Source: Bispira polyomma
Lineage: Eukaryota
Reading direction: 5' to 3'
DNA length: 64,000 nt
Assembly (NCBI GenBank): GCA_965649765.1
Contig: OZ287758.1
Coordinates: forward strand, 16,678,001-16,742,000
Of the stretch, positions 16,801 to 63,484 are shown piece by piece; positions within the stretch are counted from its first letter, which is position 1; the number at the start of each line of letters is the position of its first letter. The position numbers and the translations under genes are program-made. The notes beneath the pieces were generated by a model. It saw nothing but the letters and a program-made list of their open reading frames with translations. It searched no databases and had not been told where the DNA came from.

Positions 16801-18594
16801 CATGTATCAGATATCTATCAGTCTGACGCCAGCTGACATTAACCTATATTGTTAATCCTAATACTTACAGTGTAACTACTATAATGTGTCATATGAGATC
16901 ACTGATCAGATGTGGGCAGAAGCTTCACATCTAAAATCGCAAAATCTGGCCGATTTGGTGTTTTTTTTTGTGCAGTATGTGTTTTTAAAACGAGATTCCA
17001 ATGAACCTTAACACACAAAAACATATTTTTATCGGCTGATTGGAAGCATAAATTGGCCGGCATCTGACAAAAAAACACCTTTATTTATAAAATCTTGCGA
17101 CATCAGGATTGGCGAAATGGAAGCCTAGACTTTGATGATCATTGTCATTACCAGACGCATGGACAATTTGATGATAGTGTGGCATCCAGAGCAGGTATAT
17201 ATTAACATTAGTATTGAGAAGAAGCACTGGAACCTCTCCCATCAAGTGAGCATCGATAGTATAAACCATAATATAACATTTGTTTCTTATTTTATCTAGC
17301 TTGTTGGTGACACGAGACCACTTTTCTGAAGGTGGTAAATACTCTAACTATAGTCATACAGATAAAACATACAGTATTGTGTACAAATGTTGTATCACTA
17401 ATTTACTGAACACAGAAAGACAGTGGTAACTATGATTTGAGGAGAATGTCTACCTAAAATTTGCATACAACACCAGTAAAAAAATGAAACTGTATGTCTG
17501 GAGCCACATCCTGTAAAAATCAGCCCCTTATGTGATATATGTCCAATATGGAAATATGAGTAAAAGACCCATAGACAGGGTTGCGACAGAACTACATATT
17601 CTTGTTCTATATGCAGTATTACAATACATTTTTCATTGCCACCACTTAGGTGATTGACACTTCCCAAAAACGTTGTTGTATCATAACTTTGGCTAATATG
17701 ATTAGCTATTAGAATATAAATATACAGCAGTCAAGCATAAGACACTAGATACTACTATGTGTGACATTTGGCCATTGTATATGTTCCGGGCAGCCACTGC
17801 TGCGATGGTAAATGAGTTAATTGAGCGGGGGGCCTCTCTGTAGTTGGTACCATTGGGGCACTGGGACAAAAACCTGTGTTATTGTACAAAAGAGCCATTG
17901 TAGTGAAAACACCAGAGAGTTTAAATCTGCCAAGTTAGCCTTCTGTTTTATCAGAGCTACAGACTCTGCAAACCACATGGGTTTAGGAGTAAAACTGCCA
18001 AATCTATCAGTGTTTAAGCAAGGTCCTGTTTGCAAGGAACTAGAGGATTTAGGGTTACCACTGGGGGTGATTTGTGATGGCATTGATTCACATGTAACAA
18101 CTAGTGGTAGTTGTTCCATCCAATAAATGCTTATTGGCAGATGTTAATACAGTTTAACGCCTTAATGATAGTTACCATACTATGATAAAAAACAGTGATA
18201 GTAAAGTTAAAGATATTAGGTTTAAGATTAACCTGAAGTAAGGGTTGTGGTTGTGATTGCAACAATTAGCAAGTAAGATTTGTGTAGGAGTGGCATCTCC
18301 CAATGGACACTTGATGTGCCTTTCTGTGTTTCAACAAGTCATGTCTATGCCTTTATGTTACAGATAGGAAGATATAGTAGGGTTTTTACTATAAACCATA
18401 GAACAAGAATAACATACATACTTGTTTTTAACAACTATGCTATAAATACTGTTTCTGAGGTCAAAATTGTTAGTGGTGGTGCTGATATATAAAATTATGC
18501 TGATTTAAATAACAAGTTTTTGTGTAGACTTTTTAAAATGGAATGGTAGTTACAATATACAATAAGTATTCTTTTGTCATTTACATATAGGCTT

Positions 18595-31163: not shown

Positions 31164-32588
31164 ATTTTAATGTTTCCCTTTTTCGTGCAGAATTTCTTCT
31201 CCCTGACAAACTGGCTACTTTCTACATACACTATATAGTGTGGGAAAAATCGGCTTCAAGTGACAGTTGACATGGCCACTTACTGAATGTGTAATGACTA
31301 TTAATAAAGGAAGACACGGCTAGCTCCTCTCAGCTATATATCAAGTCTAGCTGTGTGCTGAAGGGAAGGAGAGTTATGTGTGTCTGTGTGTTTAAAGGTT
31401 CCCAGTGGAACACTCAATATACAGGCAACACATTGTGTTCAGAGCTCCCAGCATTATAGGCTGTGGGATGAAATGGTGTTGTGTGGTGATAATTAGTTTA
31501 GACTGACTAATTGATAAAAAATAGTTATTGTTTATTGTGAAATATACTTACATAGACAGTCTAGGGGTTTATTTTTATATCAACATTTTTTTAAACATCT
31601 AATCAACAATAAATTAGACATACAATGTCTACATCAAATAAATGAATGTCTTTGGAAGTTAGTAAATATTTAATGAAATACATGGCTGAGAGATTAATAA
31701 AGCATCCTTAGCTCATATCCTACAGTGGGGGAATTTATTACATTCGGATTTGTCAACACTAACTGCTTTGTGAGGGATTATAGTCAGCTGGAGTAACCGT
31801 GGACATTTTGTTATGATCTTTAAACATTTTGTTCCAGGAATTGGATATCTTGTGGATATATAAATATAGATACAACGTCTTGTCTCATGGGGAATCAACA
31901 TAACTATGACCATACATGTATTAGTGATTTTGTTCATGTGAAGAAGGGTTTTCAACATGTGACTGTGACATGTTAAAAATGTTGACTTATAGCAGAGAAT
32001 ACTAATAGTATTGTATACAGTTTAAAATCCATGGAATAGATGTTAATTATAAAGAGTTGAGATACACAAGTGACAGATGTTTCTTTATAATGGTAGTTAC
32101 TGGACTAAAGACTAATAGTGACTCACCCAATGTGTGTTCTTGTCTTATACTGATTCTATTTGGCACAGGTATATATTACATTAGGTCACATGGTTATTTT
32201 AGATTATTTATACAAAGTAATACTTCTGCTCTGTTTTGTTTTTGAATACATCAAATGAACTTTCAGATACAAAGTAGTAAATGCAACATAACATGTCAAA
32301 GATAAAATAAAGTTAATTGTGCAATGGGATGTAATGACTGGAACAGGATGCATTATGGTGACATATCTCCATCACAAAGTCTGTTTGTGTTAGGATAGAA
32401 TTATATATATATATGTATATAGCACATTAATCCTAGGTGTTTATGGTACAAACCAATATAAAAAAGGTAATGACAAAATATATAACAGTGACTCTCCTTT
32501 GTGTTTCAGAATTAAAAATTGGAAACCAAAAGTAAAAAGTGAGACATTGTCTTTTATACTATGGTGTAATGACCAGTCCTGTGTAACC

Positions 32589-32682
32589 ATGGTGATTAGA
32601 GACAGGTCAGAGGGCCTCAAGGTCGGGGTGGGTGGGACCAGGACCTACCAGTTATACCTATTGATTACACTCGTCTTTGTAG
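32589..32682 (+). CDS. Coding exon 1 of channel-less iGluR ligand-binding-domain protein (start codon and first part of signal sequence)
   Basis: Acceptor ctttgtgtttcag ends at 32509. ATG at 32589 is in strong context (accATGg). Translates MVIRDRSEGLKVGVGGTRTYQLYLLITLVFV-G. Consensus donor G|gtaagt at 32683 is phase 1 and joins the 43801 exon in frame, giving one continuous hydrophobic segment. Confidence 0.75.
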
Positions 32683-34869
32683 GTAAGTAACTCTTTGTAA
32701 TCATGTTTTCTTATATGACATTTACTACAAAATATGACTTTGCTGACCTTTTCAGGAACAGAAAACTTTTCAAAGCAATTAATTGCCAAGTTGATTTCTA
32801 TATTCTATTGTGGCGTAGTGGGTAATATACTTGCTTAGGAATGACCAGAGGACCTGGGTTCTCTCAGCCTTGGGTATATAGACACAGTCAGATACATAAT
32901 GGCCTGGATGACAACTTAATATGGCGATCCTCTGTCAAAGGGTCCTGTCACCAATGACAGGCAACTTTAGAACCTTTGAGGATGTTGATAAATGGTCATC
33001 CTGAAGACTCTCTGAACTCTCTCAGAATTTATATCCCAGTATCTATCAATTAAAAAGGAGTGATTAAATAGCTGACATGTAAATATTTAACCAAATCTCA
33101 CAGAAGCGAGGGTATCACCTTTGATGGGTTGCCTATTTAGATAGTAATTACCTCCACCCAGAGTATTGTGTTTTGGACGGTCATTTCTTGCTCTCAGACA
33201 AAGACTACTGAATCAATTTACATGATATTTGGAGGAAATGGACTAAATAAATAATACATAAGATTTTGTAGCAGATCTGGCTAGAAGGGGGGTCGGGGCT
33301 TGAGGAGACTTCTTCCTCTGTTACATATTACCAGACAAGTCAGTAGCTATAACATCAACACATAGATCCAATGACACAGTTCTGTTACCAGCCATGTTAA
33401 ATTGCTGTCTTTATGGCTGTTTTTCTCCACTTGAGGAGTAGTTTATAGTAATCTTAGCTTTGATTACCAGATTCACCTTTCTCGTAGCTATTGTGAATGC
33501 TTATCAACAACAGTCACTATTGTACAGTCTTTATTGTCGGTTTGTTACTCAAAACCAGCAATACATTAGCAATATAGTGTAATACTGAGCTAGAATTTCG
33601 CTTTCTATCATAACATTATTCCGAGGTTTTAATTACACACACTTTGCATTCCTCCCACAATCTGCACCACACTAGAGCATTGATTTCCTGCCAATTCGAG
33701 GCAACACCTGACGACATTTTTTGTTAAGTCTGAAATACATGAAATAACTCGAATTTTAAAATTCTAATCCTGTTTTAACCCATTCATCAATAGGTCAGTC
33801 GATAAAGCTATCTGCACATGAAAGGCTTGCATTACTATTGACATATTTACAGTTTTTGTAATGGCTTTTTGTTGATGTATTTATTTTATCCTGTGTAGTA
33901 AATGAGTTTGTTTTACATAAACATGTAGCTTGTCATGAACGCGAGACAGGAATTCTAGAAGTTGAGGGTGTGTGCACTTGATTTCCAGTGCAGTAAATAA
34001 AAATAACACTTTATGTCTCACTTGGAACTAAAAGGTTTCCATTGACATGTGCTATTTTGTAACTACCAGCATGCCATGAACATGTTAGGCGCAGTTTTCG
34101 TTTAGTTTCCGGTTCACTTCACTTTTCAGTGTGGCCAAGCAGAGGACCCAGGTTTCGTCCCATTCTGGGGTTTCTCCCTACAGGCAGATACATGATGGTC
34201 TGATCACCACTTAGTCCTCTTGTCATTAGGTCATATCCCTATCGGCAAACTAAAGAATATTGTGGAACTGTTGATAAATGGTGTCATCTTCAAGCCTTGT
34301 CGTTAGGGGAATGTCACTTGTGGTATTGAATGGTTGTACTTGTACAGTCATGAAAAAGTACATTATTGAATACCTTGAAAGCAGGGACATACTGCACTGA
34401 AGATTAATATGGAAACAAATATGAATACAAAATTGTACAACTTAAACACATGTCTTCACATATAAGTACATAATGTTTTGGTGCCAGTACCAAACCAAAA
34501 TGATTGTTGCTCTTTTCTTGTGTTGGATCCAAGCCTATTTTGTTTGGTGTGTTAATGGGTAAAAGTTAATATTTCTATTGTTCTTTTAACCACCTCTTAA
34601 ACTTATAAACAAACGTATTCTATTCTCAGCTGTATTTATCCATTATTGAAAGCTAGTTGCCAGTATTTACAGTAAAGAGCTAGCTTTAAACATGATCCAA
34701 GCTGAAATAAATTAGCAAAGGTGTAGTTTTTCATGTTCCTTTCATGCCTCATCGCCATTTGATTACCTTTAAATATAGAACAAACTGTTCTGAGTCATCA
34801 AAGAACATTTTTTTTAAATTTTCAGTTTTAGATTGTAGGTTCTTTTTGTTAAGGTTGTGTATCTACACG

Positions 34870-35623
34870 CAATTGTGTTATAAAAGTGGTCTTTATAAAG
34901 AAGTGATCTAGTACAAGGTGGTACCTCTCACACAATTGTGTTATAAAAGTGGTCTTTATAAAGAGGTGATCTAGTACAAGGTGGTATCTCCCACACAATT
35001 GTGTTATAAAAGTGATCTTTGTAAAGAGGTGATCTAGTACAAGGTGGTATCTCTCACACAATTGTTATAAAAGTGGTCTTTATAAAGAGGTGATCTAGTA
35101 CAAGGTGGTATCTCCCACACAATTTTGTTATAAAAGTGGTCTTTATAAAGAGGTGATCTAGTACAAGATGGTATCTCTCACACAATTGTGTTATAAAAGT
35201 GGTCTTTATAAAGAAGTGATCTCGTACAAGGTGGTATCTCTCACACAATTTTGTTATAAAAGTGGTCTTTATGAAGAGGTGATCTAGTACAAGGTGGTAT
35301 CTCCCACACAATTGTGTTATAAAAGTGGTCTTTATGAAGAGGTGATCTAGTACAAGGTGGTATCTCCCACACAATTGTGTTATAAAAGTGGTCTTTATGA
35401 AGAGGTGATCTAGTACAAGGTGGTATCTCCCACACAATTGTGTTATAAAAGTGATCTTTGTAAAGAGGTGATCTCGTACAAGGTGGTATCTCCCACACAA
35501 TTGTGTTATAAAAGTGATCTTTGTAAAGAGGTGATCTAGTACAAGGTGGTATCTCTCACGCAATTGTTATAAAAGTGGTCTTTTTAAAGAGGTGATCTAG
35601 TACAAGCTGATATCTCTCACACA
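34870..35623. repeat. 63-bp minisatellite, ~12 near-identical units (intron 1)
   Basis: Unit caattgtgttataaaagtggtctttataaagaggtgatctagtacaaggtggtatctc(t/c)caca. It explains the repetitive ORFs at 34849-35563. Confidence 0.97.
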
Positions 35624-38600
35624 CTTTTGAATGTATAGAAGAACCTCCATTATCCAAACCTGTTGACAAATGTATTTGGATAATAGATAAAAGTTTTGAA
35701 TATAGAGATTCACAGTATAAAAAGTAGCAAATGTAATTTTTGGAGATTTAAAGTAAACTGGATTATCTATTTTTTAGATAACAGAAGTCCGAGTGTTAGA
35801 CGTTATATTATATGTTAATTTAATCAACTTTAATTAGAACAGTAAAACCTTTTTGATTCTGGAAGATGACTGTTCTGACTTGTCCCAGACAGCGCTTGAA
35901 GTGATATATTTCCTCAAGGATTAGCCTCAAGCCTCAGTTGATCAAAGGGGTTAATTAATATTTCACTTTGCTTTTGCAGCTTGTTACAAAAATCAGGGCC
36001 TTAGAGCGACAGTGTGGTTGTTTATGAGTTTTATGAAACCCCTAAAACAGTCTATAATTCTTACTTTTATTGTCTTATAAGGAGCCTGTCTAATTCTGAG
36101 GGATCTTCTACATTAAATAGCCCACTGGATATTTCATCTGCAAGAGAAGTGATTCTTAAGGCCTCCAGGAAGAAAAATGTGTGCATGTGCCAATATTTAA
36201 CATCCAACAAATTTATGATTTTACAGTTCCTTGATATGTTAATAGCTTTTACACGGTAACACATATTTTTAAATCTAATTTACTCAGCAATTACAACCAT
36301 GCAATTCTATGTTTGTAACTTAAGGGTAGTACAATAGGTCCCCCAGCCATACACATACAGCCAGTATTAACCCATTCAACCACAATCAGAACTCGGTAAG
36401 ATGGGGGATTTCCTGTTATTGTCCAATCTATATAAATGTGTCAGAGGCCTTGACGTGGAGACGTTTCAGTAATGAATAAAAAGCTCAAGTGGTATGAGTT
36501 AAATTATTTGGTCAGATTAAAGTTTTAACCATATGGTCGTAAACATGGCCATAGATTTTTTATGGGTTAACACACTTATTGCATAGATTATGGCAATACA
36601 AACTATCAAATAGAATGTAATCACAATTTAAAAAAGGAAATCTTCACTAGAGAATGAAAATCGAATGTGATATTTGGGTGGGACATTTTGGCATCACTGG
36701 AACTTGTTGGTTTGTTTATACATCAATGAAGCATTGTGTTTTATCAATGGTTTACTGTCTCATCTGTGTCTAAAACATATTTAGTCAATAGAACCCCACT
36801 GAATGATGAAAACATACAATACACAGATTATAATCCATAACAATACCCATTCAATTAGCATGAACAAAATTAATTAGAAAATATGCACTGTGTTGTAAAT
36901 GTAAACACATTTGGTTCCAATTTTCAATATCCCCTGATAAAAACTTTCATGTCACATTGTAAACACAAAAACTAAAGGTTACAAGAACCAAAAAGACATA
37001 AATAAAACGTACAAAATACATTTTAAAATGATCGAAGTATTTGATAAAATATGCCCTAATGGTAATACTATATATTTTACAGGTGTAACATTTTGTGGGG
37101 AATGGAGAAATCGGAAGAGGGAAGGGGTGTTCTTCACAGGTTTTAATAATAATAATAACTATTATTATTCACTTGATATAGTGCAGTTATGAACATTACT
37201 GTTATCTAATGAGCTATGACATTATTACCTCAACCAGTTTTTCGTCCCTCAGAAAGCATACTAGCCGTGCTGTCACATATGGCACACAAAGACTAACACC
37301 CAAAAGCGGCCAGGTACCTATGTATACACCTGTGCAGAGAGGGACAACTTTGTGTGAAGTACCTTGTACAAGGGTACAATCACCAGGCCGGTAGCGAGGA
37401 TAGAAGTGGGACCCTCAGATCTTTCAGATTCAATGTCTAACACTCTAACTGCTAGACCACTGAGACCACACATAATAACTCTTGGGAAGTAATTGGGGTG
37501 GTTTCTGGTTAAAAGTATTGGGTGGTTGGTCTTCACAGGTTCAAAATACTGTGAATTGTGGTTTTAAAACTGGTTGCTCTAGACAGGTGGTTGCTCTTTG
37601 CAGGTGGTTGCATGAGCAGTTTAGACTATATTAACACACATATAATGTATTAACCTCTTCTTTATATGTTAATACACATCCATTTGGACTATTTTAGAGA
37701 TGCTTAAACCTCTTCTGGGTTGTTGACTAGTACTGAGTACTTTCCATATCTGTTTGTGGTGTTGTTCTCTGGTAAAACTGTGCCACAGGATGCTGCCAGA
37801 ATCCATATATTTTAACATACTGGGCTGGTGTTAAAAGAAACTTATTCTTTACCTTTTGCTTTAAGAAATTTGATTGGCTGGTCAAATTGTTTAAAGCAAC
37901 CTGATTGGCTGAAACTTAGAACATTCTAAAAATGGCAGTGTTAGAATGTTTCTGAATATCGCCCTAGAAATACATTGTCACAATACGTTAAGCAACGCTA
38001 CCAGAATCCATACAAAATTTAATTCTTTCTCTGTATTCAAGGCATTGCCTATAGTACATAACTACAGTAACTTCAACCAGTCTAAGTCTGTCACAGGATA
38101 GGAGTCTGTGTCTAAAATCAAAGTAAACCTGTCATACTCCTCTCATAAGACATCATTAATGGCTCCAGGGTGACTGCTCAGCATCATGTGAGCATTGATA
38201 CAGATTGGGACATGAATCAAACTTACATAGCAGGACTCTATTGAGAGTGAAGAAATCTCAGTCTGAGATGTAATATATCAAGTGGGCTATTGTTAGGACT
38301 CTCAGCATGACTGGCATGACATGCCTCACCAAAGATTAATTACTTTCCAGAGTGATATTTAAATTGAAGAATGCACATATAAATAGATAGAAGTCAGCTG
38401 AATAAAGCAGCCTTAAAGTTCAGTGACTAGTTTCTTAAAGCAACTTACTTTATTGGATAGGTCAAACAAGTTGGAAATAAACTTCTACAACCAACAATTG
38501 TTTTACAACATTTTTTATTTAAATCAATACCATTTCTATTGATATCTTTAAGTACAAACCATATTTGCTATTACTACAATATAACTTCTAGTAATCAAAC

Positions 38601-41600
38601 ATCAATTCTCCAAAAATAAAGTGCATGAACTCATTTGCAATCTTTTATACTGAAAACTTTTCGGTGTACTGCAAAAGTGGATCTTTTTGGGTCCTCATTA
38701 TATGTGCCCCTATTGTGAGAGCATAGGATGTGTGAAGATATGAAGATAAACTTCTGTGAATGTTAAGGGAGAGAGACATTTGTTTTTATAGTGACACCAG
38801 CATTCTAATATTCTATGTAAACTTTAACAAAGCATAAACATGGCAGCCAGCTCAGCATACATGGGCTTATGAGGCACCTTTTTTTACTAAGTACATGAGA
38901 TACAAATAATATATCTATAGCATCAACAACAGTATATATAAACGTGATATATATGGCTATATACAAATAATACATATAGCATAAAACAACAAAGTGTACA
39001 GACATGTGATACATATGGTGCAAGGGCTATTTAAATATTGGATGTTTATGTTCATCATATATATATAGTTCCCAAATAATCACAAAAATGAGTTCTATTT
39101 TCTTTCTGCATCTGAAATTTTTACTTTTCTGGATGGCTTTAAGACTTTAAAGTCAGATTTTTACTACTAATATATTTTATTAATTTACTCAGTTCATCCC
39201 AAAAAGCTACACAGTTGAAAGTTAAATTAATTTATTAATGTATTATACATCTCTGCAGCATTTTATTTGAACTATTAGCTCCGGCATGTGATATTTAAGA
39301 TTTTTTATGAAATAAAGAAGATCTATTTTGGGATATGATAGTTTTTTAAAATTTCTTTTTAACAAATACCTAGTGTTAGAATTGGGATAATAAAGACGAA
39401 GTTCTGAGTCAGATAAAGTTCTGTTGAAAGCCATTTGTTTGGCATGAGAAAATGGTGACCTGTCATCACAACGTCAAAATCTTACATGTTTGAAATACTT
39501 GGAGTCTGTAATAAACCAAATAAATCCCCTTTTGTACTGGGTAAATAAAAATTTCAGCTTAACAATTTAATTGAATTATTTTTCACTTTTGATTATTTTT
39601 TTGTTAAAATATCAGCGCAAGTTTCAGTTTCATTTAAAATTATTTTTCACTATCCACCACTAGCTAAAATACAATAGTCAAGTACCCCGATATTTTAAAG
39701 TAATATCCAAATTATAATCTGGATAATAAATAAAATGGACCTAATTCTAATATATGTTGCAGATAATAATACAATTCTTTGTATAAAATAAGGGCAAGAC
39801 CCAAACAGATATTGTCAGATAAAGTTCTGTTGAATGCTATTAGTTTGAGTCCAGAGAGATGACATAACTTTCTCTTGTCCCTCTTGGGCCTCCTTAATGA
39901 CTGCACTGATCCCCCTCTTACAACATTCTAAGGTTTGATAAGTCAGTAATTACAGTAAGAAGGATGTCCCCGGGGTTGGGTAAACTAACACAAAGATAAT
40001 GATGTCAAATAAAGACCTCACTCATTGTACGGAGAGCCTTATGATGTGGGGGTTCTGGTTTTATCATTATTATTTCAAAAACAGTAAAACAAATGATACA
40101 CACTTTGTGAAGTGCTGTTTGGAATTGGTATAGAGGAATAACACTTTATTACAATAAATGTAATAAAAATGTTTTAATTATTCTGGAAATACTGTTGAGT
40201 ATTACATGTTTCACTTCAAAAAATTGTAATGTGCTATATATATTGTTTAAAAAAACAATAAAAAAAACAACTTTACAAATACATTGTACATGACTCTAGA
40301 ATTTTAGATTTGGATAAATTGTGAAACACAGAACACCCGAAAGATTTATTTGGCCAAAGGCCATACAAACAGCTGGATGTAGTTCATTTGTAAAACGCCA
40401 CCATTTACAGCTTTATCCAATTACAAAGGCGTTTTATTGCAAAAACAAAACAGCCCTGCAAAAGTATCCAAGTGAAGTCTGATGTTCTCCTTGGGCCAGA
40501 AAACCGACAGATATTTCTGCAATGGCCGCCTGAGAACAGCCCCATTTGCAAGTGCTAAGTGAATTCTCTGATTATCTTCATCAATGTTTTATCACGTTAT
40601 AAAAGGTGTAAGCAGTTCATTAAGTTCATTTCTCCAATAATTATATCAACTTAGGAGAAATTGTATTTTGATCAAAATTAAACAGAAGGCGTGTTTATAC
40701 TGATGTGGGACTGTTTGAATAAACAAGTGACCCACCGGTCAGCCACTTTTGTCAGATTTAACCCACAATACCCTGCAGCCACCTGATGCTTTGATATGAG
40801 TGATTCGTCCCTAAAGAAATCTTTTTGATTTAGTTTAGAGTTTTACTTACTATATAAAGAATAAGACGGGAAGTATAGTGATAAATAAATTGTTCATTTC
40901 CAGTTATATATTTTTCGCAAAAATCACATGAAAGAACATTTTAATATATTAGATTAGTTTGATTTAACATTATTTTCATCAACTAGTACCAGTATATAAG
41001 GGTCCCGTGCTTTTACTGTGACAGCCACTTCAGTATGGAATAGAGTTTGTACTAAAATTCAGGCAGCTGCAACTCTGTCATCCCTCAGAAGTAGGTCATT
41101 TGTTTCAATTAGCCTTCTATGTGGTTTTATACTCAAATAATCACTAAGAAAGGGACTAGACAATGCTGTGTCTCTAGGTGTACACCTTGCAGGTGTTTAA
41201 CAGGGTGGATGAAGTGGTTTGGTAAACTACCATTCTAGGCGCGGATGTTTTTAAAACCATGGCCAAATGCCTCTTTTCTTTAGTGGCTCTTATCCAGCTT
41301 AATTAAATATAAACAATGACTTCCGGTTATATTCTTCCAGATCGGCGTGTGCATAGTGGCTTGGATGACCACTTATAATGGTGGTCCTCTGGCACTAGGT
41401 TCTATCACCAGTGGCAGGCTAAAGATACTTGAGGACGTTGATAAATGGTCATCCTCAAGGCAGATATATGCACTAAGTATAGATTTGAATACAGAATCCA
41501 GGTATCTTAATTGACTTCAGGCAGTCTTAAACACCATAAAAGCTCTTACATTACATGATCTCCAAACTGTATCTAAACCTTGCAGTGGCCTTTATAAATC

Positions 41601-43800
41601 ACAGACCACAATAACCCTTGTTCCCTCACACAAACCAAACATTTATAGAAATAAGCCCCCAGATTGGAGTTCCCTGGAACTGGTAAATCATTTCTCTGTG
41701 TGAGAAAATGAGGAAGTCCCTGTGTGTCCAAACAGACAGTAATGTGATTGTGTTTACACAGATTACTACTCATACTCCTACTGTGACTAACTCTCTGAGG
41801 ACTTTACTCATCACATACAAACATCCTTTTTGAAAGCTCACTCACATTTATTCTGTCAAATCAAATCTAGATATAAATGGTTTGACTATACTTTGTACTG
41901 TTGTGGTTGCACATTCTTTGTATTACTTGCCCATCTGTTGTATTTAAGAAAGTTAATATGACTAGAGTAAGATTAGCCCCTATCTGGCCTGCCAGTGTAA
42001 AGTCTGACAAATGGCCAGTGGCCCTAATGTTAGTGAGGGTCATTCATCAAGGCTCTGATGTGATCAGCCTTGGTCATTTCTTCTACCAATCATGTGTCTG
42101 CACACACAGACACCCAAACACTGACGCATACACCCACACACCACCACCCACATCTACAGCACATCGAATGGCCTGTCTCCATCTTTACAAACCACGCATA
42201 CATGTCAAAATGTTTGCTCCTTATACAATCTAACCTGCGTAGAGCAACCACCTACCAGAAATTCCCAACTGTTTTTTTCTTCAGAAGCAGTTGCTTTTTT
42301 ACAAGTTCACCAATGAAATAGTCAAAGTCTGCACCATATCATGTTGGAAAACATTATAAAGGCTTCATCTGAAAAGAAAAAAGTCATTCTATTTACATGA
42401 TTAAATTTATTAACATTACATATTTCACAAGTTCACATTTAACTGATTTCTCTTTAATAAATGTTGGTTTACAAAATTGCTGCAAATTTGAAAATAGAAT
42501 CAAGAGCAGGTCTCAAAAGTTTACTAATGCATAAATCATAATCCTCAATAATCAATAAGAGGGATAAATCTTATACTAGGCAAACAAATATATTCCATAA
42601 AACCCACTGAATGATAAAATCATACAATACAATCCTATTTGTTGACAAACAAATTTAGTCACCATGGAATGGTAAAAAAATACAATACACATATATTACC
42701 TCAAGGCCCTATTGTGGTTGATGACACTGATATAATGTCTATAGCATTACCAATGCCAATTGGATTGAACACAGTTGATAAGAAAAGATTCACTTTGCTT
42801 TAAAAGCAACATGGAAACGGGTGTATGGAAACGGTACTTAACCTACACAATGTTTGTGTGGAGGCAGCAGATGGGCTATTGATCCTCTAACTTATTTATC
42901 TTTGTATCATGGTAACACATACCTTACACTACACATAATGAAATGATTAACGGTTTATCAACAAGCCATTACAGAGATTAAGCAGAAGAAACTCATTTCC
43001 CCAAAAAATCATCACATCAGAGAATTATCTATAGGCTGTTCATGAAATCACGGATTCTCGGTAACTTAGTAAGGTCTCTATGATTACTTTTGTTGGTGGT
43101 ATGCCTGTGGTCTAGTGATCAGGTGGCCAGAAGCTCATCGGTTTGACTCTTAGTTGAGGGGGTTGGTTTAGTAATCTGAAGGTCCCTGGTTTAACTCCTG
43201 CTAATACTGCTAGGTTCATTGGTAGGATAACGTGGTTAGGCAAGAGGTGAACATTGCCCACCCACTAATGATGATCAGGCACTACTGCTTTGCAGAGGAT
43301 GATATATCAATAGAGTGCTACATAAATGCTTCAATAATCAAAAACTGTTCTTGCAGGAATTATTACTTCAAACATATACAGATGATTTAAAAAAAATTAT
43401 TAGTCATTTTAGATTCATCACAGAACAGCCTCCATAAGCTAAACGTTGTAAATTTAACCTGACGTAACATGGCCGACAGTGTTATTCCAATGATTTTGGT
43501 TTAGTTTTTATTTTATATTAATTGATATGTACCATGTTAGCATGAAGTAACAGAAAATCGGCTACTTTATCATATATAAGGAATGAGGGGATGTATTTAT
43601 TTTTACCAGATTCTATCTCTATGTGTGCTAATTTTGATTTACAACGTTTTCCTTATGCAAGCCGTTCTGTCCCTTTTTGTGAGTCCGTCGTCAAAATAAC
43701 AGCAAGGAATCTCGCTAAATAGGGACAGATTATTCGGTCTACATTGCCAGATATGATCTCTGTGGCTTTAAAATAAAATGTATTTGTTTATTATTTCAAG

Positions 43801-43883
43801 GACTCTATTCTGTACTTACAGCAGTAGTGACTCTGCCGTCTGTTACAGAAGCCAGGAACCATTATAGAGTGACATCAGTGTTG
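43801..43883 (+). CDS. Coding exon 2: end of signal peptide and first beta-strand of iGluR S1
   Basis: Acceptor ttatttcaag| and donor ttg|gtgagt; 83 nt, phase 1 to phase 0. Reads (G)LYSVLTAVVTLPSVTEA-RNHYRVTSVL. YRVTSVL|IEPY aligns with the VVVTTIL-ESPY motif that opens S1 in AMPA/kainate receptors. Confidence 0.85.
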
Positions 43884-45477
43884 GTGAGTATAGACATGGA
43901 ACATGTAGTAATGTCAGCACCATAGAGTAGTGTGGCTTATATCAGAAGTAATCAGGGGAACTGAGCAACTAATAAATAAGTAAAATGTATAGCTTTCTCT
44001 CGGGACATGTTTTCTAAGTGTGGTACTGTTTGTCCAGGTACATTTTGTCTTGATATGTTTTCTACATCCCACTTTTTTTAATTTACATTTAGCCAGTTAC
44101 GATAAAAAGATTGTATTCACTATATTTATGAATAAGGATATTCTCCTCTATAATACCACTGGTACTAAATTAATTAGTTCCTGCAGTTACACATATAATT
44201 TTCATTTTATTTAAAACACTACTAAGTCTATCACACGGTATTCACTGCATTACACTGTATACATTACCTAGAATTATTATTAAGTTGGCATCTAGTTGTT
44301 ATTTTTCTATGCTTAAATTCTACCTTGTCATGCTGATCATGTTTAATACATTTCTATCACACTGCAATTAAGTGAATGCAATAGCTGATACATTGAAGTT
44401 TGAAGGTATTGGCCATTTCCTTAGTGCTAAGAAGGGGTTAGAAACACTACTATCTAGTGATATTCTGCTGGAGAAGTCAAACCTTCTCTGCTTACAACTA
44501 ATTAACCTGGCTATTTTGATTCAGATTGATATTTAATACACCAAACAACGTGGGCCCATATCTTCTAAGAAACTCAAGCTTAAACTCCACTCAAATGAAG
44601 GCTAACCTGTACATAAAACCGTTCATTTCAGCTTTCAGCACTCAATTTTAATATGCACTGAAATCTAACTTTATCCAGATATTATAGAGACTTCAGTTTT
44701 GATCTTAGAAAATAAGGCAATGCCATGGGAAATTACTAAGTAACGTCGATATTTCTTCAGAGCAAACATAAAATAATTACTGAATCATGTAATTGTCAGA
44801 CATAGAGACTGCCACTGATGTATATACCCTGTTTCAAAACACAAGTTAGACTCTAACTGATTCAATAATTATAATTTAATCACGTCTAATATATCATTTG
44901 TGACATTTTAACAACTTTTGCTTCTGAGGAAAACGTGTTGGGGTAAATAGCCATTAGTGTTGGCTTACTTCACGTTTTGTGCACTATGAATATAGAAAAA
45001 CAACAAACGAAGTGCCAACATGGAAAATTAATTGAAATGTATTTTACTTACTGTTGTCAAAATATTTTTATCAAATAAAAGTTAATACGATTTTTTTTTT
45101 TAATAAAAAATGAACAAATCTTAATTTCCAGTAGGGGTGAGTCTATTCTAGTTCACTGGTCCAAATACACTAATGATATTTTTTCCTCAAATCTTAGACT
45201 GGCTCAGATTTGTCAATTTTTGCTACCAAACAATTTCCTAAACAAAAGGTCACAAGAGTAAATTATTGTCAATATGTGGCAACAGAAAGATTTGCTTAAG
45301 TATTGACAGTATTTTCAAAGATATGGCTTCTTAATATAATGTATGACATGGTTTTATCTCCAGTCCTTCTCTTAATAGTACACAGGTTTTAAATTAAATG
45401 TTAGCTACGATAAAATATAATCAAAATACAGATTTACTTAAAATTACCAAGGATTTAATTATTTTGCTTGCCATCCC

Positions 45478-46132
45478 AGATCATGGGATACCTTCTGTTC
45501 ACCAGACCAACTCCCTAACAACTAGACCATGGGATACCTTCTGTTCACCAGACCAACTCCCTAACAACTAGACCATGGAATACCTTCTGATCACCATCCC
45601 AACTCCCTAACAACTAGGCGATGAGATACCTTCTGATCACCAGACCAACTCCCTAACCACTAGACCATAGGATACATTCTGATCACCAGACCAACTCCCT
45701 AACAACTAGACCATAGGATACCTTCTGTTCACCAGACCAACTCCCTAACCACTAGACCATAGAATACCTTCTGATCACCAGTCCAGCCCTTAAAAACTAG
45801 GCTATGAGATACCTTCTGATCACCAGACCAACTCCCTAACAACTAGGCGATGGAATACCTTCTGATCACCAGACCAACTCCCTAACAACTAGGCGATGGA
45901 ATACCTTCTGTTCACCAGACCAACTCCCTAACAACTGGACCATAGGATACATTCTGATCACCAGACCAACTCCCTAACAACTAGGCGATGGAATACCTTC
46001 TGATCACCAGACCAACTCCCTAACAACTAGGCGATGGAATACCTTCTGATCACCAGACCAACTCCCTAACCACTAGACCATAGGATACCTTCTGATCACC
46101 AGTCTTGCCCTTAAAAACTATGCTATGGGATA
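45478..46132. repeat. 46-bp minisatellite, ~14 units, ending ~45 nt before exon 3
   Basis: Unit ccatgggataccttctg(a/t)tcaccagaccaactccctaacaactaga. Confidence 0.97.
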
Positions 46133-46177
46133 CTACTTGGCCTATATTATATCTAACAAATTGTTTTCTTATTTCAG

Positions 46178-46381
46178 ATAGAGCCGTATTTAATGGTCAA
46201 CCCTAAGTATGCTAACCACACAGGCAATGACCAGTACATGGGTTACATTGCTGACCTAATGCATGAACTGTCCCAACGTGTGGGATTTCACTACAGGATC
46301 CACGTGGTCAGGGATGGCGCATACGGGATCCGGAGATCCGACGGATCCTGGGATGGTATGATAGGAGAGCTCCAGAGAGAG
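46178..46381 (+). CDS. Coding exon 3: iGluR S1 lobe
   Basis: Acceptor tttcttatttcag| and donor gag|gtgagt; 204 nt, phase 0-0. Reads IEPYLMVNPKYANHTGNDQYMGYIADLMHELSQRVGFHYRIHVVRDGAYGIRRSDGSWDGMIGELQRE, matching S1 motifs GNxxYxGYxxDL, DGxYG and WxGMxGEL. Confidence 0.95.
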
Positions 46382-46741
46382 GTGAGTAGGTCAGAATGGT
46401 GTTTTAAAATGGCAGTGAATACAACATGAAAATAATTGTCTTGTGTGGATTTTAAACAACTGGTCAATATGTCAGAAATCAAGAGGCTGTATACAGGCCT
46501 TGACCGAGTATTGGTAACACCACTTATCTCCCACATCTGCAGTCCTGGGTTTAAATCATGACCCTTGTGTGTATGTGAGAAAGTTGGTAGCATACCTAAT
46601 GAAGGCCAGTGGTTTGCAGATCGAAAAGCCTTGACCAGCTACCCCTACTGTGATTTCCTCAAACAGTGAAATGCATATTGTAAAATGGCACAAAACATGT
46701 TAAAAGCGTTGTGAAACCTAACTAAATTCAACGTAAGCCCA

Positions 46742-47130
46742 CACTAAACTAAACATAAGGGATGCAGTAATGATGCCTCGGAACATAGAAACCAGTTCAT
46801 CATAATCTGTCTAATTATCTGTATTAGATCCTTTGCTATGTTCTCATTTTCACTATTTCTACTTATTAATTCAAATTAAACCCAAACAAAACATAAAGGC
46901 TCTAGTAATTATGCCCCAGAACATACAAACCAGTTACTAATAATCTGTCCGATCTATATTAGATCCTTTGCTTTTTTCTCACTTTTACTATTTCTACTTA
47001 TAAATTCAAATTAAACCCAAACTGAACATAAAGGCTGCAGTAATTATACCCCGGAACATACAAACCAGTTCATCATAATCTGTCTAATCTACTATTATAT
47101 CCTTTGCTAATTTCTCACCTATTTCTACTG
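46742..47130. repeat. ~136-bp tandem repeat, 3 units, filling the 3' half of intron 3
   Basis: gaacata.aaaccagtt occurs at 46781, 46919 and 47054, and the downstream sequence is colinear. Confidence 0.9.
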
Positions 47131-47140
47131 CTCTGTACAG

Positions 47141-47833
47141 GAAGCAGACATTGCTGCTGCTCCTCTCTACATCACCAATCAGAGAAAGCGAGCTGTCAGC
47201 TTCTCAAAGCCTTTCTTGAATGTCCAGGCCACCATCCTCTTGTCTAAGTACGAGAAGTATCCCGGGATTAAGTCAGCCAGGGATCTGCTGGGACAAGGCC
47301 GGATCCAGTACGGCACTCTTAATACGGGGGTTATAGTGCATGCCTTTAAGAACAGCAATGACTCCACCTACAAGGCTATGTGGAATACGATGAAAGAGAA
47401 CGGGCCGGAGGTGTTTACAGCCAGTAATGTAGAGGGCATAGACCGTGTGAGGAGAGGGCATTACGCCTTTATACTGCCTTCTACCATAGGCCAATACATA
47501 TCAATGCAAACCCACTGTGATCTCAAGACACTGGACAGCTTTCTCATGAACAGGGAGTTTGCCTTAGCCGTGTCCAGGCACTCCAAGAACATGCCCTACA
47601 TGTTACCGGACATCAACATAGGGCTGGACATTATGAGAACCTCGGGAAAGCTGGACGAGATCTATAAGAAGTGGTGGCTAGATAAGAACCACTGTGGGAC
47701 AGTGAAAAGTAGTTCAGTAGTTAGCCAGGGACACTACACCTCTACTGGCCCCGGTATAGCCAATCAAATCACACGACACATTTTAACTATTGGCTGTCTG
47801 CTCTTTACATGGTTTGTTATTGGCTTTTGGTAA
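47141..47833 (+). CDS. Coding exon 4 (last): end of S1 fused directly to the whole of S2, plus C-terminal hydrophobic/GPI-like tail
   Basis: Acceptor ctctgtacag|. Reads EADIAAAPLYITNQRKRAVSFSKPFLNVQATILLSK (S1 end), YEKYP, then GIKSARDLLGQGRIQYGTL...MW...EGIDRVRRGHYAFIL...HCDL...GKLDEIYKKWWLDKNHC (S2), then a spacer and ILTIGCLLFTWFVIGFW*. 231 codons with no internal stop; TAA at 47831-47833. Confidence 0.95.
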   Translation, partial: EADIAAAPLYITNQRKRAVSFSKPFLNVQATILLSKYEKYPGIKSARDLLGQGRIQYGTLNTGVIVHAFKNSNDSTYKAMWNTMKENGPEVFTASNVEGIDRVRRGHYAFILPSTIGQYISMQTHCDLKTLDSFLMNREFALAVSRHSKNMPYMLPDINIGLDIMRTSGKLDEIYKKWWLDKNHCGTVKSSSVVSQGHYTSTGPGIANQITRHILTIGCLLFTWFVIGFW

Positions 47834-49258
47834 TAGTTTGTTGGGGTAGTATAAACTGTGTGTATATGTATATATGGCTTAAGGTGATTAGTAATGACCA
47901 CAGCTGTCGCTGAATGCCCATTTTTTCATCAAATAATCCTAATATTGACTTCCCTTTACGGTGAATGAACCTTGACACAGACTCCTTTGAATTATGGAAT
48001 TGAACGATACAGTTCCAATATTATTTGTCATAATGGTAAAAAGTAAACACTATATTTCAAATAAATCATATAATAACATAACCCTTCATTTGCTTTGAAT
48101 GGTGTAGATGTTTGTGCACAATGTGTATGGATTTTTTTAGAGATAGCTTCATAAAGTATCTTTACACGAGATTTAATCAAATATAAACTGCAAATTCCAG
48201 TTATATTCAACAAGAGGGGGCAGTACTAATCGCCTTGGTCCGGTGTGTGAGTCTATGTGTATATGGTTCTATATATGTGTGTATGTATGGTTGCAAATAA
48301 GTCTGTATGAGAACGAGTGTGTAGGTGAGTATGTAAATGTCAGTAATGTGCCATATGTTCATTGTAGATACACATTATGGATGTATAACCACATTTATAT
48401 GTAGAGTTTTCTAGCCGGTTATTCACCAGTCAGTATTTTAATAATGTCTTTGTTGTATGCAATTTATACCTTGTAATTTACTGTATTTGTGAAGTTAGTA
48501 CATTATATATTTAACAATACCTTCTGTCTGCTCTTTTATACTATCTCAGTACATTGTTCAATGTTGATGGTAAACCGATGTAACTCTAGGCTTGATTGTG
48601 ATATATTTGTGGTGTAAATAGTTCATGTAGTGTTTAAACTAGACATACTGCTATGGGGTTGTAACTTCTACGCCCGAGTTTGTGTCACAGAAATTAAAAC
48701 ACTGACATTCTTCCTATGAGGTTTAATGTAATTTGTTTTTAACTTTTAGTGCTGTTATAATTATATCACATCTTAGTAATTATTATGTCTGCTAGGTCAT
48801 TGTACCATTGTTACAGCTTGGTAGAACGAATCTAGAATTCATTGAACAAGATGTTGCCATGTGGCATTTTTACTGTATAAATCTATTAATTAAATATAAT
48901 TATGATTGCTAATGCTGTAATGTTAGATATGGGAAGCCGACTCTAATTGTATGGCATTTGACATGTTCTATATTAAGAAATACTATTGCTGTGTCTCATA
49001 AATGATAGAATTTAGCCGCCTTATCATATGTACAAACTAGTGTTAATGTTATTTAAATGCGATGTTATTATGCTATCAGACTGACTAAGTCACAAGTCAC
49101 CAGAATGCCTCCTATCAGTTAAACACTTTGGGATTGCCATTTGGTCACTTTATCAAATGTGTGGATGAACCATAGAAATCCCCCGTATGACCACAATATC
49201 ACATCATCATTGGAACAACTGCACTTGTGACTCATTATACCTAGCATATGAAGAAATA

Positions 49259-62039: not shown

Positions 62040-63484
62040 CGTTCGTTGTTGTTCAATCCCTCAAATTTGGCTCGTATAGCAATCAAGTCGGGTCTCAATA
62101 TTCCAGCTTGGGAATTACCCAAAATCATCCAGACAAAATTATTGTTCAATACCTCAAATTTGGTTTCCCACTATCACTTAAAAACCTTCACATTTTACTT
62201 AATACAAACATTACTAACCATGCATCAGCTATACAACATGTAAAGGCGGTACTAGCTTACCTAACTAAAGAGAAACATAAGGGGGCGATATTAGGGCCAG
62301 TTATAAATGTTACTGACAAAGAATTCCACTGTTCACTGTTCCTTACTAGACCCAAGGACATGGAGAAATGGCGAGTTATTTTGAATCTTTCTTACCCCCC
62401 AGGGGTCTCGGTTATTGACCATGTGGACAATTTCTTTGATGGCACGGCCTTTTGTTTAAAATTTCCTAATATTGACCATGTTGCACAAGCTATTCGCAAC
62501 ACAATGAATCCAGCTATGTTCAAGGTCGACGTTGCCCGCGCATTCTGGAACTTGAGCAATAACCCTATTGACGCAATGAAATTTGGCATTAAATGAAAAA
62601 ATGAATACTTTCTAGATGCTGCCGTGGTGTTTGGCTGGGTGCATGGTAGTGCTGCATTTCAGCAATGATCTGACATAGTGGTGGATTATATGAATAGCCA
62701 GGAATACCAATTACATTGTTATATCGATGATTATATTTGTATTACCACAGAGAATAAGGCAGAAAACGGTTTCTGTATATAAAGTAAATTGTTAAATGGC
62801 ATTGGGCTTCCAATGAATCCAGACGGAGTCTGCTCCCCAGCAAATCACATGACATGCTTAGGCATTGAATCGATATCACAACAAACACAATTAGTATTAC
62901 CAAGGAAAAAATACACTTAGTATGTAAGTATGTCATGGCTTTCTTGTTCCAAATTTCAATCCCTACTAGGCAGGTTTCTTTACATACACAAAGGTGTCAA
63001 GCCTGCTAGGTGCTTCATAAACAGATTACTAGAAGTATTTAGGTCATCTCCAGGTGCAAAAAGATTTCAAATTACAGACATTGTCAAACATGGCCTGGAC
63101 AAGTTCATCAATTGTTTGGCATAACATTTTGGGACAGGGGTTTCACAAAGACATCAATTGGTTCTGCCACTTCCTCGAATAATTCAATAGGGTCACAGAA
63201 ATGCACACAATCGATGGGGTAATACACCGAGTATATGTAGATGCTTCACTTAATAGTTTGGGAGCGTTTTGGGATAAACAAGTTTATTCAGTCGACATTC
63301 CACAGCAGTATACAGACTTATTTACAATAGTTCACTTTGAAATGGTTAATGTTATTGTGGCATTCAAAGTATGGGGCCCAAACGGGCCAACCAAAAAGTG
63401 TGTATACATTGTGGCAATTTAGCTGTGGTACATGTCCTCAATAGATTTAAGTGCAGGGATACTTTTCTTAACAGCTGCGCACGT
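62040..63484 (+). mobile_element. Decayed RT + RNase H of tyrosine-recombinase retrotransposon (DIRS order, Ngaro-like)
   Basis: FGFPL, NHASA, KE...GAILGP, FLTRPK, RVILNLSYP.G.SV, KVDVARAF, FGWVHGSAAFQ, HCYIDDY (catalytic YIDD at ~62720), then RNase H VYVDAS...FEMVNVIVA. Several in-frame stops and frameshifts. Confidence 0.85.

What the first reader, a model, noticed from the sequence alone, without database searches (positions are those of the whole stretch)
32589..47833. Natural channel-less iGluR 'S1S2' protein: a candidate glutamate-receptor analogue of AChBP
Seen: four exons splice in frame into a 357-aa protein made of a signal sequence, S1, a YEKYP linker (47249-47263), S2 and a short tail. 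The S1-S2 join lies inside one uninterrupted exon (…TILLSK-YEKYP-GIKSARDL…), so the missing pore cannot be a skipped or missed exon. Known: canonical iGluRs have an ATD and about 125 aa of M1-M2-M3 between S1 and S2. The engineered crystallography construct joins SIMIKK-GT-PIESAEDL at essentially the same point. Kainate-binding proteins and GluR0 lack the ATD but keep the pore. The intact ORF, consensus splice sites, retained S2 disulfide Cys pair (HCDL…NHCG) and N-glycosylation sequons (NHT, NDS) argue for a functional extracellular protein. Inference: a stand-alone clamshell that could act as ligand buffer/decoy, chemosensory carrier or co-receptor, paralleling molluscan acetylcholine-binding protein. 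I know of no characterised animal family with this architecture but could not search databases.
Basis: partly seen in the sequence, partly recalled or inferred. Interest (0 to 1): 0.93.

Follow-up and report, generated by a model that had tools for sequence, protein, structure and literature searches.

The report
Pore-less glutamate-receptor binding proteins of worms
This gene keeps only the ligand-gripping clamshell of a glutamate receptor, with no ion channel and probably a lipid anchor instead, and it belongs to a large, conserved, apparently undescribed family in segmented worms whose binding pocket seems rebuilt for something other than glutamate.

Summary
Confirmed and extended. Four exons encode signal peptide, S1, a 5-residue linker, S2 and a tail (357 aa; more likely 348-350). 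The S1-S2 join lies inside one exon, three sequencing runs span it without differences, and dN/dS to an orthologue is about 0.15. It is not a one-off. This genome has at least seven pore-less genes, and about 70 clusters at 50% identity share the join, including Capitella, Helobdella, Owenia and vent tubeworms, plus intron-free transcript-like contigs. Two corrections. The tail looks like a GPI-anchor signal (69/82 relatives end in a terminal hydrophobic stretch, 0/38 channels), so the protein is probably surface-tethered, not soluble like AChBP. The pocket keeps the carboxylate arginine (46/46 in its clade) but replaces T480, S654, T655 and E705 with Y/F, V/I, I/L and P, so glutamate binding is unlikely; a small organic acid or betaine-type ligand fits better. 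A second group keeps a canonical pocket, and tail-less secreted versions occur in a fly and in plankton. Ten literature searches found no description. Sister notes on this window had flagged the pocket and tail; the scan had not reported the family on other DNA. No ligand, partner, tissue or own-species RNA data.

The parts
32510..32588 (+). probable 5' untranslated part of the first coding exon, after a strong acceptor AG at 32508-32509 (frame open, so coding use not excluded)
   Evidence: inference
32589..32682 (+). exon 1 CDS: n- and h-region of the signal peptide, phase-1 donor
   Evidence: no RNA or homologue support
   Evidence: conserved in orthologue L015 (80% over 20 aa) and C7 paralogue
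46178..46381 (+). exon 3: S1 lobe (Lig_chan-Glu_bd), Y450 equivalent, NHT sequon; both flanking intron positions match those of channel iGluRs in this genome
   Evidence: (E 2.5e-18)
47141..47833 (+). exon 4: end of S1, linker, all of S2, tail, stop
47168..47185 (+). pocket: Tyr at the T480 position (47168-47170) and the invariant Arg485 equivalent (47183-47185)
47249..47263 (+). YEKYP linker in place of the roughly 120-residue M1-M2-M3 pore module
47327..47335 (+). G-V-I at GluA2 positions 653-655 (channels: G-S-T)
47477..47479 (+). Pro at the E705 position (43 of 46 in the clade)
47516..47695 (+). S2 disulfide pair C718 (47516-47518) and C773 (47693-47695) equivalents, invariant in all pore-less rows
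47696..47830 (+). Ser/Thr/Gly-rich spacer and terminal hydrophobic stretch (47780-47830), no cytoplasmic tail: GPI-signal-like; no detectable similarity to M4

Best explanation
The gene encodes a cell-surface, probably GPI-anchored, stand-alone iGluR ligand-binding clamshell. It arose from a genomic copy of a non-NMDA-type iGluR gene that lost the ATD and, by an internal deletion, the M1-M3 pore; the family then expanded in annelids. Shown: gene structure, fold, purifying selection, family, shared intron positions, pocket substitutions, terminal hydrophobic tail. Inferred: secretion-pathway entry, GPI attachment, and cleft closure on a ligand. In this clade the ligand is probably gripped by its carboxylate (Arg485) and by a hydrophobic/aromatic wall, without a free alpha-amino group: a small organic acid, or an N-methylated carboxylate such as a betaine. 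Lacking a pore or cytoplasmic tail, it cannot signal alone. It most likely captures and presents or buffers its ligand at the cell surface, as a binding subunit for a separate receptor or transporter or as a local sink.
For: Fold: AlphaFold model of full-length relative P0013 core, pLDDT 94.8, TM 0.89-0.91 to GluA LBD structures. Selection: dN/dS 0.146 (bootstrap 0.08-0.23) against orthologue L015; synonymous sites saturated against the C7 paralogue with pN 0.24. Family: 4 further single-exon paralogues on C7, C2, C4, C11 and 2 multi-exon ones on C11; about 70 clusters at 50% identity; named members in Capitella, Helobdella, Owenia, Paralvinella, Ridgeia, Lamellibrachia. Capitella and Owenia genes have the same S1-end/S2/tail single exon and S1 intron positions. 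Intron-free contig L025 has an in-frame stop upstream of its ATG, so no ATD. Tail: 69/82 have a hydrophobic 15-mer within 10 residues of the C-terminus, 62 also a small-residue omega-like site; 0/38 channels do; tails score no better than shuffles on an M4 profile. Pocket in the 46-row clade (SH-aLRT 97): R485 46/46, T480 to Y/F 36, S654 to V/I 35, T655 to I/L/V 43, E705 to P 43; channels keep T/S480 38/38 and E/D705 38/38. Roles of these positions: PMC12226733; Arg kept in acid-sensing Drosophila IRs: PMC8575457.
Against: No RNA run holds this gene. GPI was judged by a home-made hydropathy and small-residue rule, not a trained predictor, and the omega criterion is permissive. No ligand docking or binding data. 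Pro705 could alter the hinge region enough that the cleft binds no small ligand. No partner is identified. The structure predicted was a 46%-identical relative, not the window protein.
Confidence: 0.6

Rival explanations
1. Ligand-independent surface protein: the clamshell serves as a protein-interaction or adhesion module, or as an auxiliary subunit that packs against the LBD layer of iGluR/IR channels; the pocket changes stabilise one conformation.
For: Two of the three main amino-acid contacts are lost and the pocket is filled with bulky residues; a clade-specific N-glycosylation sequon is kept in 39/46 against 6/38 channels; no intracellular part.
Against: Arg485 is invariant (46/46) and the replacements are themselves conserved (P705 43/46, I708 44/46, N686 43/46), as expected of a pocket under selection; position 483 of the LBD dimer interface is variable.
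Confidence: 0.2
2. One reading: a secreted glutamate (or amino-acid) buffer or decoy, the iGluR counterpart of AChBP.
For: Architecture is exactly an S1S2 core. Group B relatives keep T480, T655 and E/D705, and tail-less signal-peptide forms exist in Bradysia and plankton transcriptomes. GPI proteins can be shed (own knowledge).
Against: For this gene: terminal hydrophobic tail; Y480, V654, I655, P705.
Confidence: 0.1
3. The tail is a plain single-pass membrane anchor (a remnant or replacement of M4) that lets the protein co-assemble with channels as a dominant-negative or modulatory subunit.
For: The hydrophobic stretch sits where M4 follows S2 and is 17 residues long.
Against: No M4 similarity (median -1.4 bits, same as shuffles); usually 0-5 residues follow it and spacer length varies from about 5 to 70.
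Confidence: 0.08
4. Artefact, pseudogene, or a horizontally acquired bacterial solute-binding protein.
For: No RNA for this species; weak matches to GlnH-type proteins (E 9e-8).
Against: Independent contigs span the join; dN/dS 0.15; dozens of intact relatives; iGluR match E 1e-31, iGluR disulfide, and iGluR intron positions.
Confidence: 0.02

Closest known systems
AMPA/kainate-type (AKDF) ionotropic glutamate receptors and their engineered S1S2 constructs
   Same: LBD fold (TM about 0.9), C718-C773 disulfide, Y450/P478/R485, two S1 intron positions, S1-S2 join at the same point as S1S2J
   Different: No ATD, no M1-M3, no recognisable M4 or cytoplasmic tail; pocket positions 480, 654, 655, 705 replaced
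Acetylcholine-binding protein (AChBP) of molluscs and annelids (from own knowledge)
   Same: A ligand-gated channel's binding domain living on without its pore
   Different: Different superfamily and fold; AChBP is soluble, pentameric and keeps the parent ligand; this one is probably anchored and re-specified
Kainate-binding proteins (GluR U1-like), ATD-less invertebrate iGluRs (P0208/P0209), GluR0
   Same: Signal peptide directly followed by S1, no ATD
   Different: They keep the pore module
Acid-sensing variant ionotropic receptors (Drosophila Ir75a, Ir75b, Ir84a)
   Same: Conserved Arg thought to grip a carboxylate of a non-amino-acid ligand (PMC8575457)
   Different: IRs have a pore and work with co-receptors; Ir75a keeps all three main binding residues; no relationship beyond the superfamily was tested
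Bacterial family-3 solute-binding proteins (GlnH), often lipid-anchored
   Same: Stand-alone clamshell of the same fold; conceptually a return to the ancestral architecture
   Different: Only distant sequence similarity (E 9e-8); this gene has spliceosomal introns and iGluR-specific features

Membership tests
iGluR superfamily (by descent) | S1/S2 ligand-binding domain homologous to GluA2 | tested here: met
iGluR superfamily (by descent) | S2 disulfide and shared intron positions | tested here: met
iGluR ion-channel subunit | M1-M2-M3 pore with SYTANLAAF motif | tested here: not met
iGluR ion-channel subunit | M4 helix and cytoplasmic tail | tested here: not met
iGluR ion-channel subunit | amino-terminal domain | tested here: not met
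   transcript-like relative with upstream in-frame stop
glutamate-binding LBD | R485 + T480 + E/D705 + T655 | tested here: not met
   only R485 kept
kainate-binding protein / ATD-less iGluR | no ATD but pore retained | tested here: not met
   pore absent
AChBP-like soluble decoy | secreted, no membrane anchor | tested here: inconclusive
   terminal hydrophobic tail argues for anchoring; shedding not testable
AChBP-like soluble decoy | binds the parent receptor's transmitter; glial/synaptic expression | not testable with these tools
   no binding or expression data
GPI-anchored protein | signal peptide, omega site, spacer, terminal hydrophobic stretch, no cytoplasmic tail | tested here: met
   sequence pattern only, simple rule
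GPI-anchored protein | actual glypiation (PI-PLC release) | not testable with these tools
   needs experiment
bacterial SBP family 3 (horizontal transfer) | closer to bacterial SBPs than to iGluRs, no ancestral introns | tested here: not met

The most novel reading that the evidence does not exclude
Annelids carry an undescribed, expanded family of GPI-anchored iGluR-derived binding proteins that act as ligand-capturing co-receptors or buffers. One branch is re-specified for organic acids or betaines and another still binds amino-acid transmitters. Arthropods have secreted counterparts, which would make pore-less iGluR clamshells a recurring or ancient protostome class of extracellular signalling proteins.
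Probability: 0.4. Interest if true: 0.9.

Novelty: new variant of a known kind. Interest (0 to 1): 0.76.

Why it matters
iGluR surveys treat the family as channels, and at least one reference phylogeny discarded sequences without the SYTANLAAF pore motif (PMC6307864), which would hide this group. A natural, selected S1S2 family shows that the clamshell has a job without a pore. It offers small, easily expressed proteins for structure and ligand screens, as AChBP did for nicotinic receptors, and a natural series of pocket variants for testing rules of ligand specificity. Members exist in tractable annelids (Capitella, Helobdella, Owenia), so expression and knock-out tests are feasible.

Tried and rejected
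Assembly collapse: rejected. Skipped or missed pore exons: join is inside one exon; no PF00060 match at any of the seven loci. Retrocopy: ancestral S1 introns are kept. Bacterial transfer: rejected. Tail as M4: no profile signal. RNA for this species: none on record. Exon-1 homologue in the orthologous contig and paralogues: not found. Single-sequence AlphaFold of exon 4 alone: useless, pLDDT 33. Careful bootstrap trees did not finish; only quick SH-aLRT trees were used, the deep nodes are unresolved, and the parent iGluR class and number of origins were not settled (AU test of one pore-less clade p = 0.41); no NMDA, epsilon or IR outgroup was included. ESM Atlas: no natural named cluster with this architecture; the top hit is a 261-aa chordate cluster, probably engineered constructs. 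Ten paper searches found no description; the library lacks most subscription journals, and the Abuin 2011 paper was not held.

Full report
OBSERVATION. Exon 3 is the S1 lobe (Lig_chan-Glu_bd, E 2.5e-18) and exon 4 holds the end of S1 and all of S2. Exon 4 aligns in one stretch to the engineered S1S2 constructs of GluA2, GluA3 and GluA4 (E about 2e-31) with a three-residue insertion at the linker. The distance across the join is 33 residues, against 30 in the GluA3 construct and 145-252 in channels. Genome-wide searches with PF00060 and PF01094 find 47 and 37 places, none at this locus. Contigs from three public runs span 46059-48400 in one piece without a difference. One detail changes: exon 2 more likely starts at 43822-43828, because the orthologue and the nearest paralogue have 59- and 62-nt exons. 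This shortens the signal peptide and gives 348-350 aa. Exon 1 is the only strong signal-peptide exon upstream but lacks RNA or homologue support.

A FAMILY, NOT AN ACCIDENT. The genome holds four more genes with the same uninterrupted S1-end/S2/tail exon, on C7, C2, C4 and C11 (35-60% identity), each with an S1 exon upstream, and two multi-exon pore-less genes on C11. In the 50%-identity library about 70 of the best 150 hits cross the join without a pore. Those with names come from Capitella teleta, Helobdella robusta, Owenia fusiformis, Paralvinella, Ridgeia and Lamellibrachia, all as hypothetical or domain-only proteins; the window is therefore most likely an annelid (inference). The Capitella and Owenia genes have the same last-exon layout. 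Contig L025 carries a whole 346-aa member without the introns that genomic members have and with an in-frame stop before its ATG, so it is most simply a spliced transcript without an ATD. Against an orthologue from another species (65-78% identity) dN/dS is 0.146 over the LBD part of exon 4. An AlphaFold model of the P0013 core has pLDDT 94.8 and TM 0.89-0.91 to AMPA-receptor LBD structures.

ORIGIN. The introns before the EPY motif and before the ADxA motif sit at the same positions in this genome's channel iGluRs, so the family descends from a genomic copy of an iGluR gene, not a retrocopy or a bacterial gene (GlnH match only E 9e-8). In a quick maximum-likelihood tree the window falls in a 46-row pore-less clade (SH-aLRT 97). 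The other pore-less proteins form an unresolved group outside the AMPA and kainate clades, near ATD-less channels. One origin for all is neither rejected nor shown (AU p = 0.41). The trees had no NMDA, epsilon or IR outgroup.

THE TAIL. After the last cysteine come a Ser/Thr/Gly-rich spacer and 17 hydrophobic residues that end the protein. Of 82 relatives, 69 have a hydrophobic 15-mer within ten residues of the C-terminus and 62 also a small-residue omega-like site; none of 38 channels does. The tails are not conserved in sequence and score like shuffles on an M4 profile. With an N-terminal signal peptide this is the textbook pattern of a GPI signal (established knowledge; no trained predictor was available).

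THE POCKET. Positions 450, 478, 480, 485, 654 and 705 bind the amino-acid backbone and 653, 655, 704, 708, 732 the side chain (PMC12226733). The window keeps Y450, P478 and R485 but has Y480, V654, I655, P705, I708 and F732. The changes are clade-wide: R485 46/46, Y/F480 36, V/I654 35, I/L/V655 43, P705 43, I708 44. All 38 channels keep T/S480 and E/D705, and so do most of the 22 group-B pore-less proteins. The carboxylate clamp is kept, both alpha-amino contacts and the gamma-carboxylate contact are gone, and the wall is more aromatic and hydrophobic. Acid-sensing Drosophila IRs likewise keep this arginine (PMC8575457). I infer a non-amino-acid carboxylate: a small organic acid, or an N-methylated one such as a betaine held by the aromatic residues. 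This is a hypothesis; nothing was docked or measured.

HOW IT MOST LIKELY WORKS. A lipid-tethered extracellular clamshell closes on its ligand and, having no pore or tail, either hands it to or allosterically engages a separate receptor or transporter, or buffers it locally (0.6). Rivals: a ligand-free adhesion or auxiliary module (0.2), a secreted glutamate decoy (0.1), a single-pass modulatory subunit (0.08), artefact (0.02). The true AChBP-like candidates are elsewhere. A Bradysia gene encodes signal peptide plus S1S2 with a canonical pocket and no tail, its join crossing an intron of about 60 nt, and a plankton transcript family has the same design.

KNOWN OR NEW. By descent it is an iGluR; it fails the tests for a channel subunit, for a kainate-binding protein and for a glutamate pocket. 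Ten full-text searches found no description of the architecture, and a reference phylogeny excluded sequences lacking the pore motif (PMC6307864). The library omits most subscription journals, so a prior description cannot be excluded. Two notes on this same window (s1-616419, s1-616439) raised the pocket and the GPI tail; I reached and tested both before reading them. The principle of a pore-less binding domain is known from AChBP, so I class this as a new variant of a known kind, interest 0.76.

Noticed in passing
G000:C11:26.76-26.80 Mb (+) and C11:36.08 Mb (-); loci L033, L035, L036, L037: Two further pore-less iGluR-LBD genes with several introns in S2; the first has a canonical pocket and a hydrophobic C-terminal tail, and its S1-S2 join crosses a 1.5-kb intron without pore exons.
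   Followed up: partly
L046:4001-5250 (Bradysia odoriphaga HA402_015934, P0238): A 289-aa signal peptide + S1S2 protein with canonical pocket and no tail in a fly; the join crosses an intron of about 60 nt, too short to hide the pore. The best natural candidate seen for a soluble glutamate-binding AChBP analogue.
   Followed up: partly
P0085, P0225, P0228-P0235, P0240, P0244-P0256, P0271 (marine plankton transcript contigs, L026, L047): An abundant family of 270-315 aa signal peptide + S1S2 proteins with short amphipathic C-termini; source animals not identified (possibly copepods, a guess).
   Followed up: partly
P0208, P0209 (Logan transcript contigs): Complete ATD-less iGluR channels with a degenerate M3 motif that fall among the unresolved pore-less group B; possible intermediates.
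   Followed up: partly
L017/L021 (G000:C7:53.25 Mb): In the C7 paralogue the 3' end of exon 3 with its donor is repeated many times into the next intron as a minisatellite, and part of the exon-4 start is duplicated just upstream.
   Followed up: no
window 34859-35623, 45478-46102, 46746-47118: Intronic tandem arrays: 63 bp x 12, 46 bp x 13.6 (abuts the exon-3 acceptor), 135 bp x 2.7 (abuts the exon-4 acceptor).
   Followed up: no
window 62108-62596: ORF that looks like a decayed DIRS-type retroelement reverse-transcriptase fragment (own recognition; no Pfam hit).
   Followed up: no
window 17817-18126: Overlapping 100-aa open frames on both strands, Cys-rich on +, no Pfam hit.
   Followed up: no
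G000:C6:12.28-12.75 Mb: Cluster of about 13 long intronless Lig_chan ORFs, probably a tandem array of variant ionotropic receptors.
   Followed up: no
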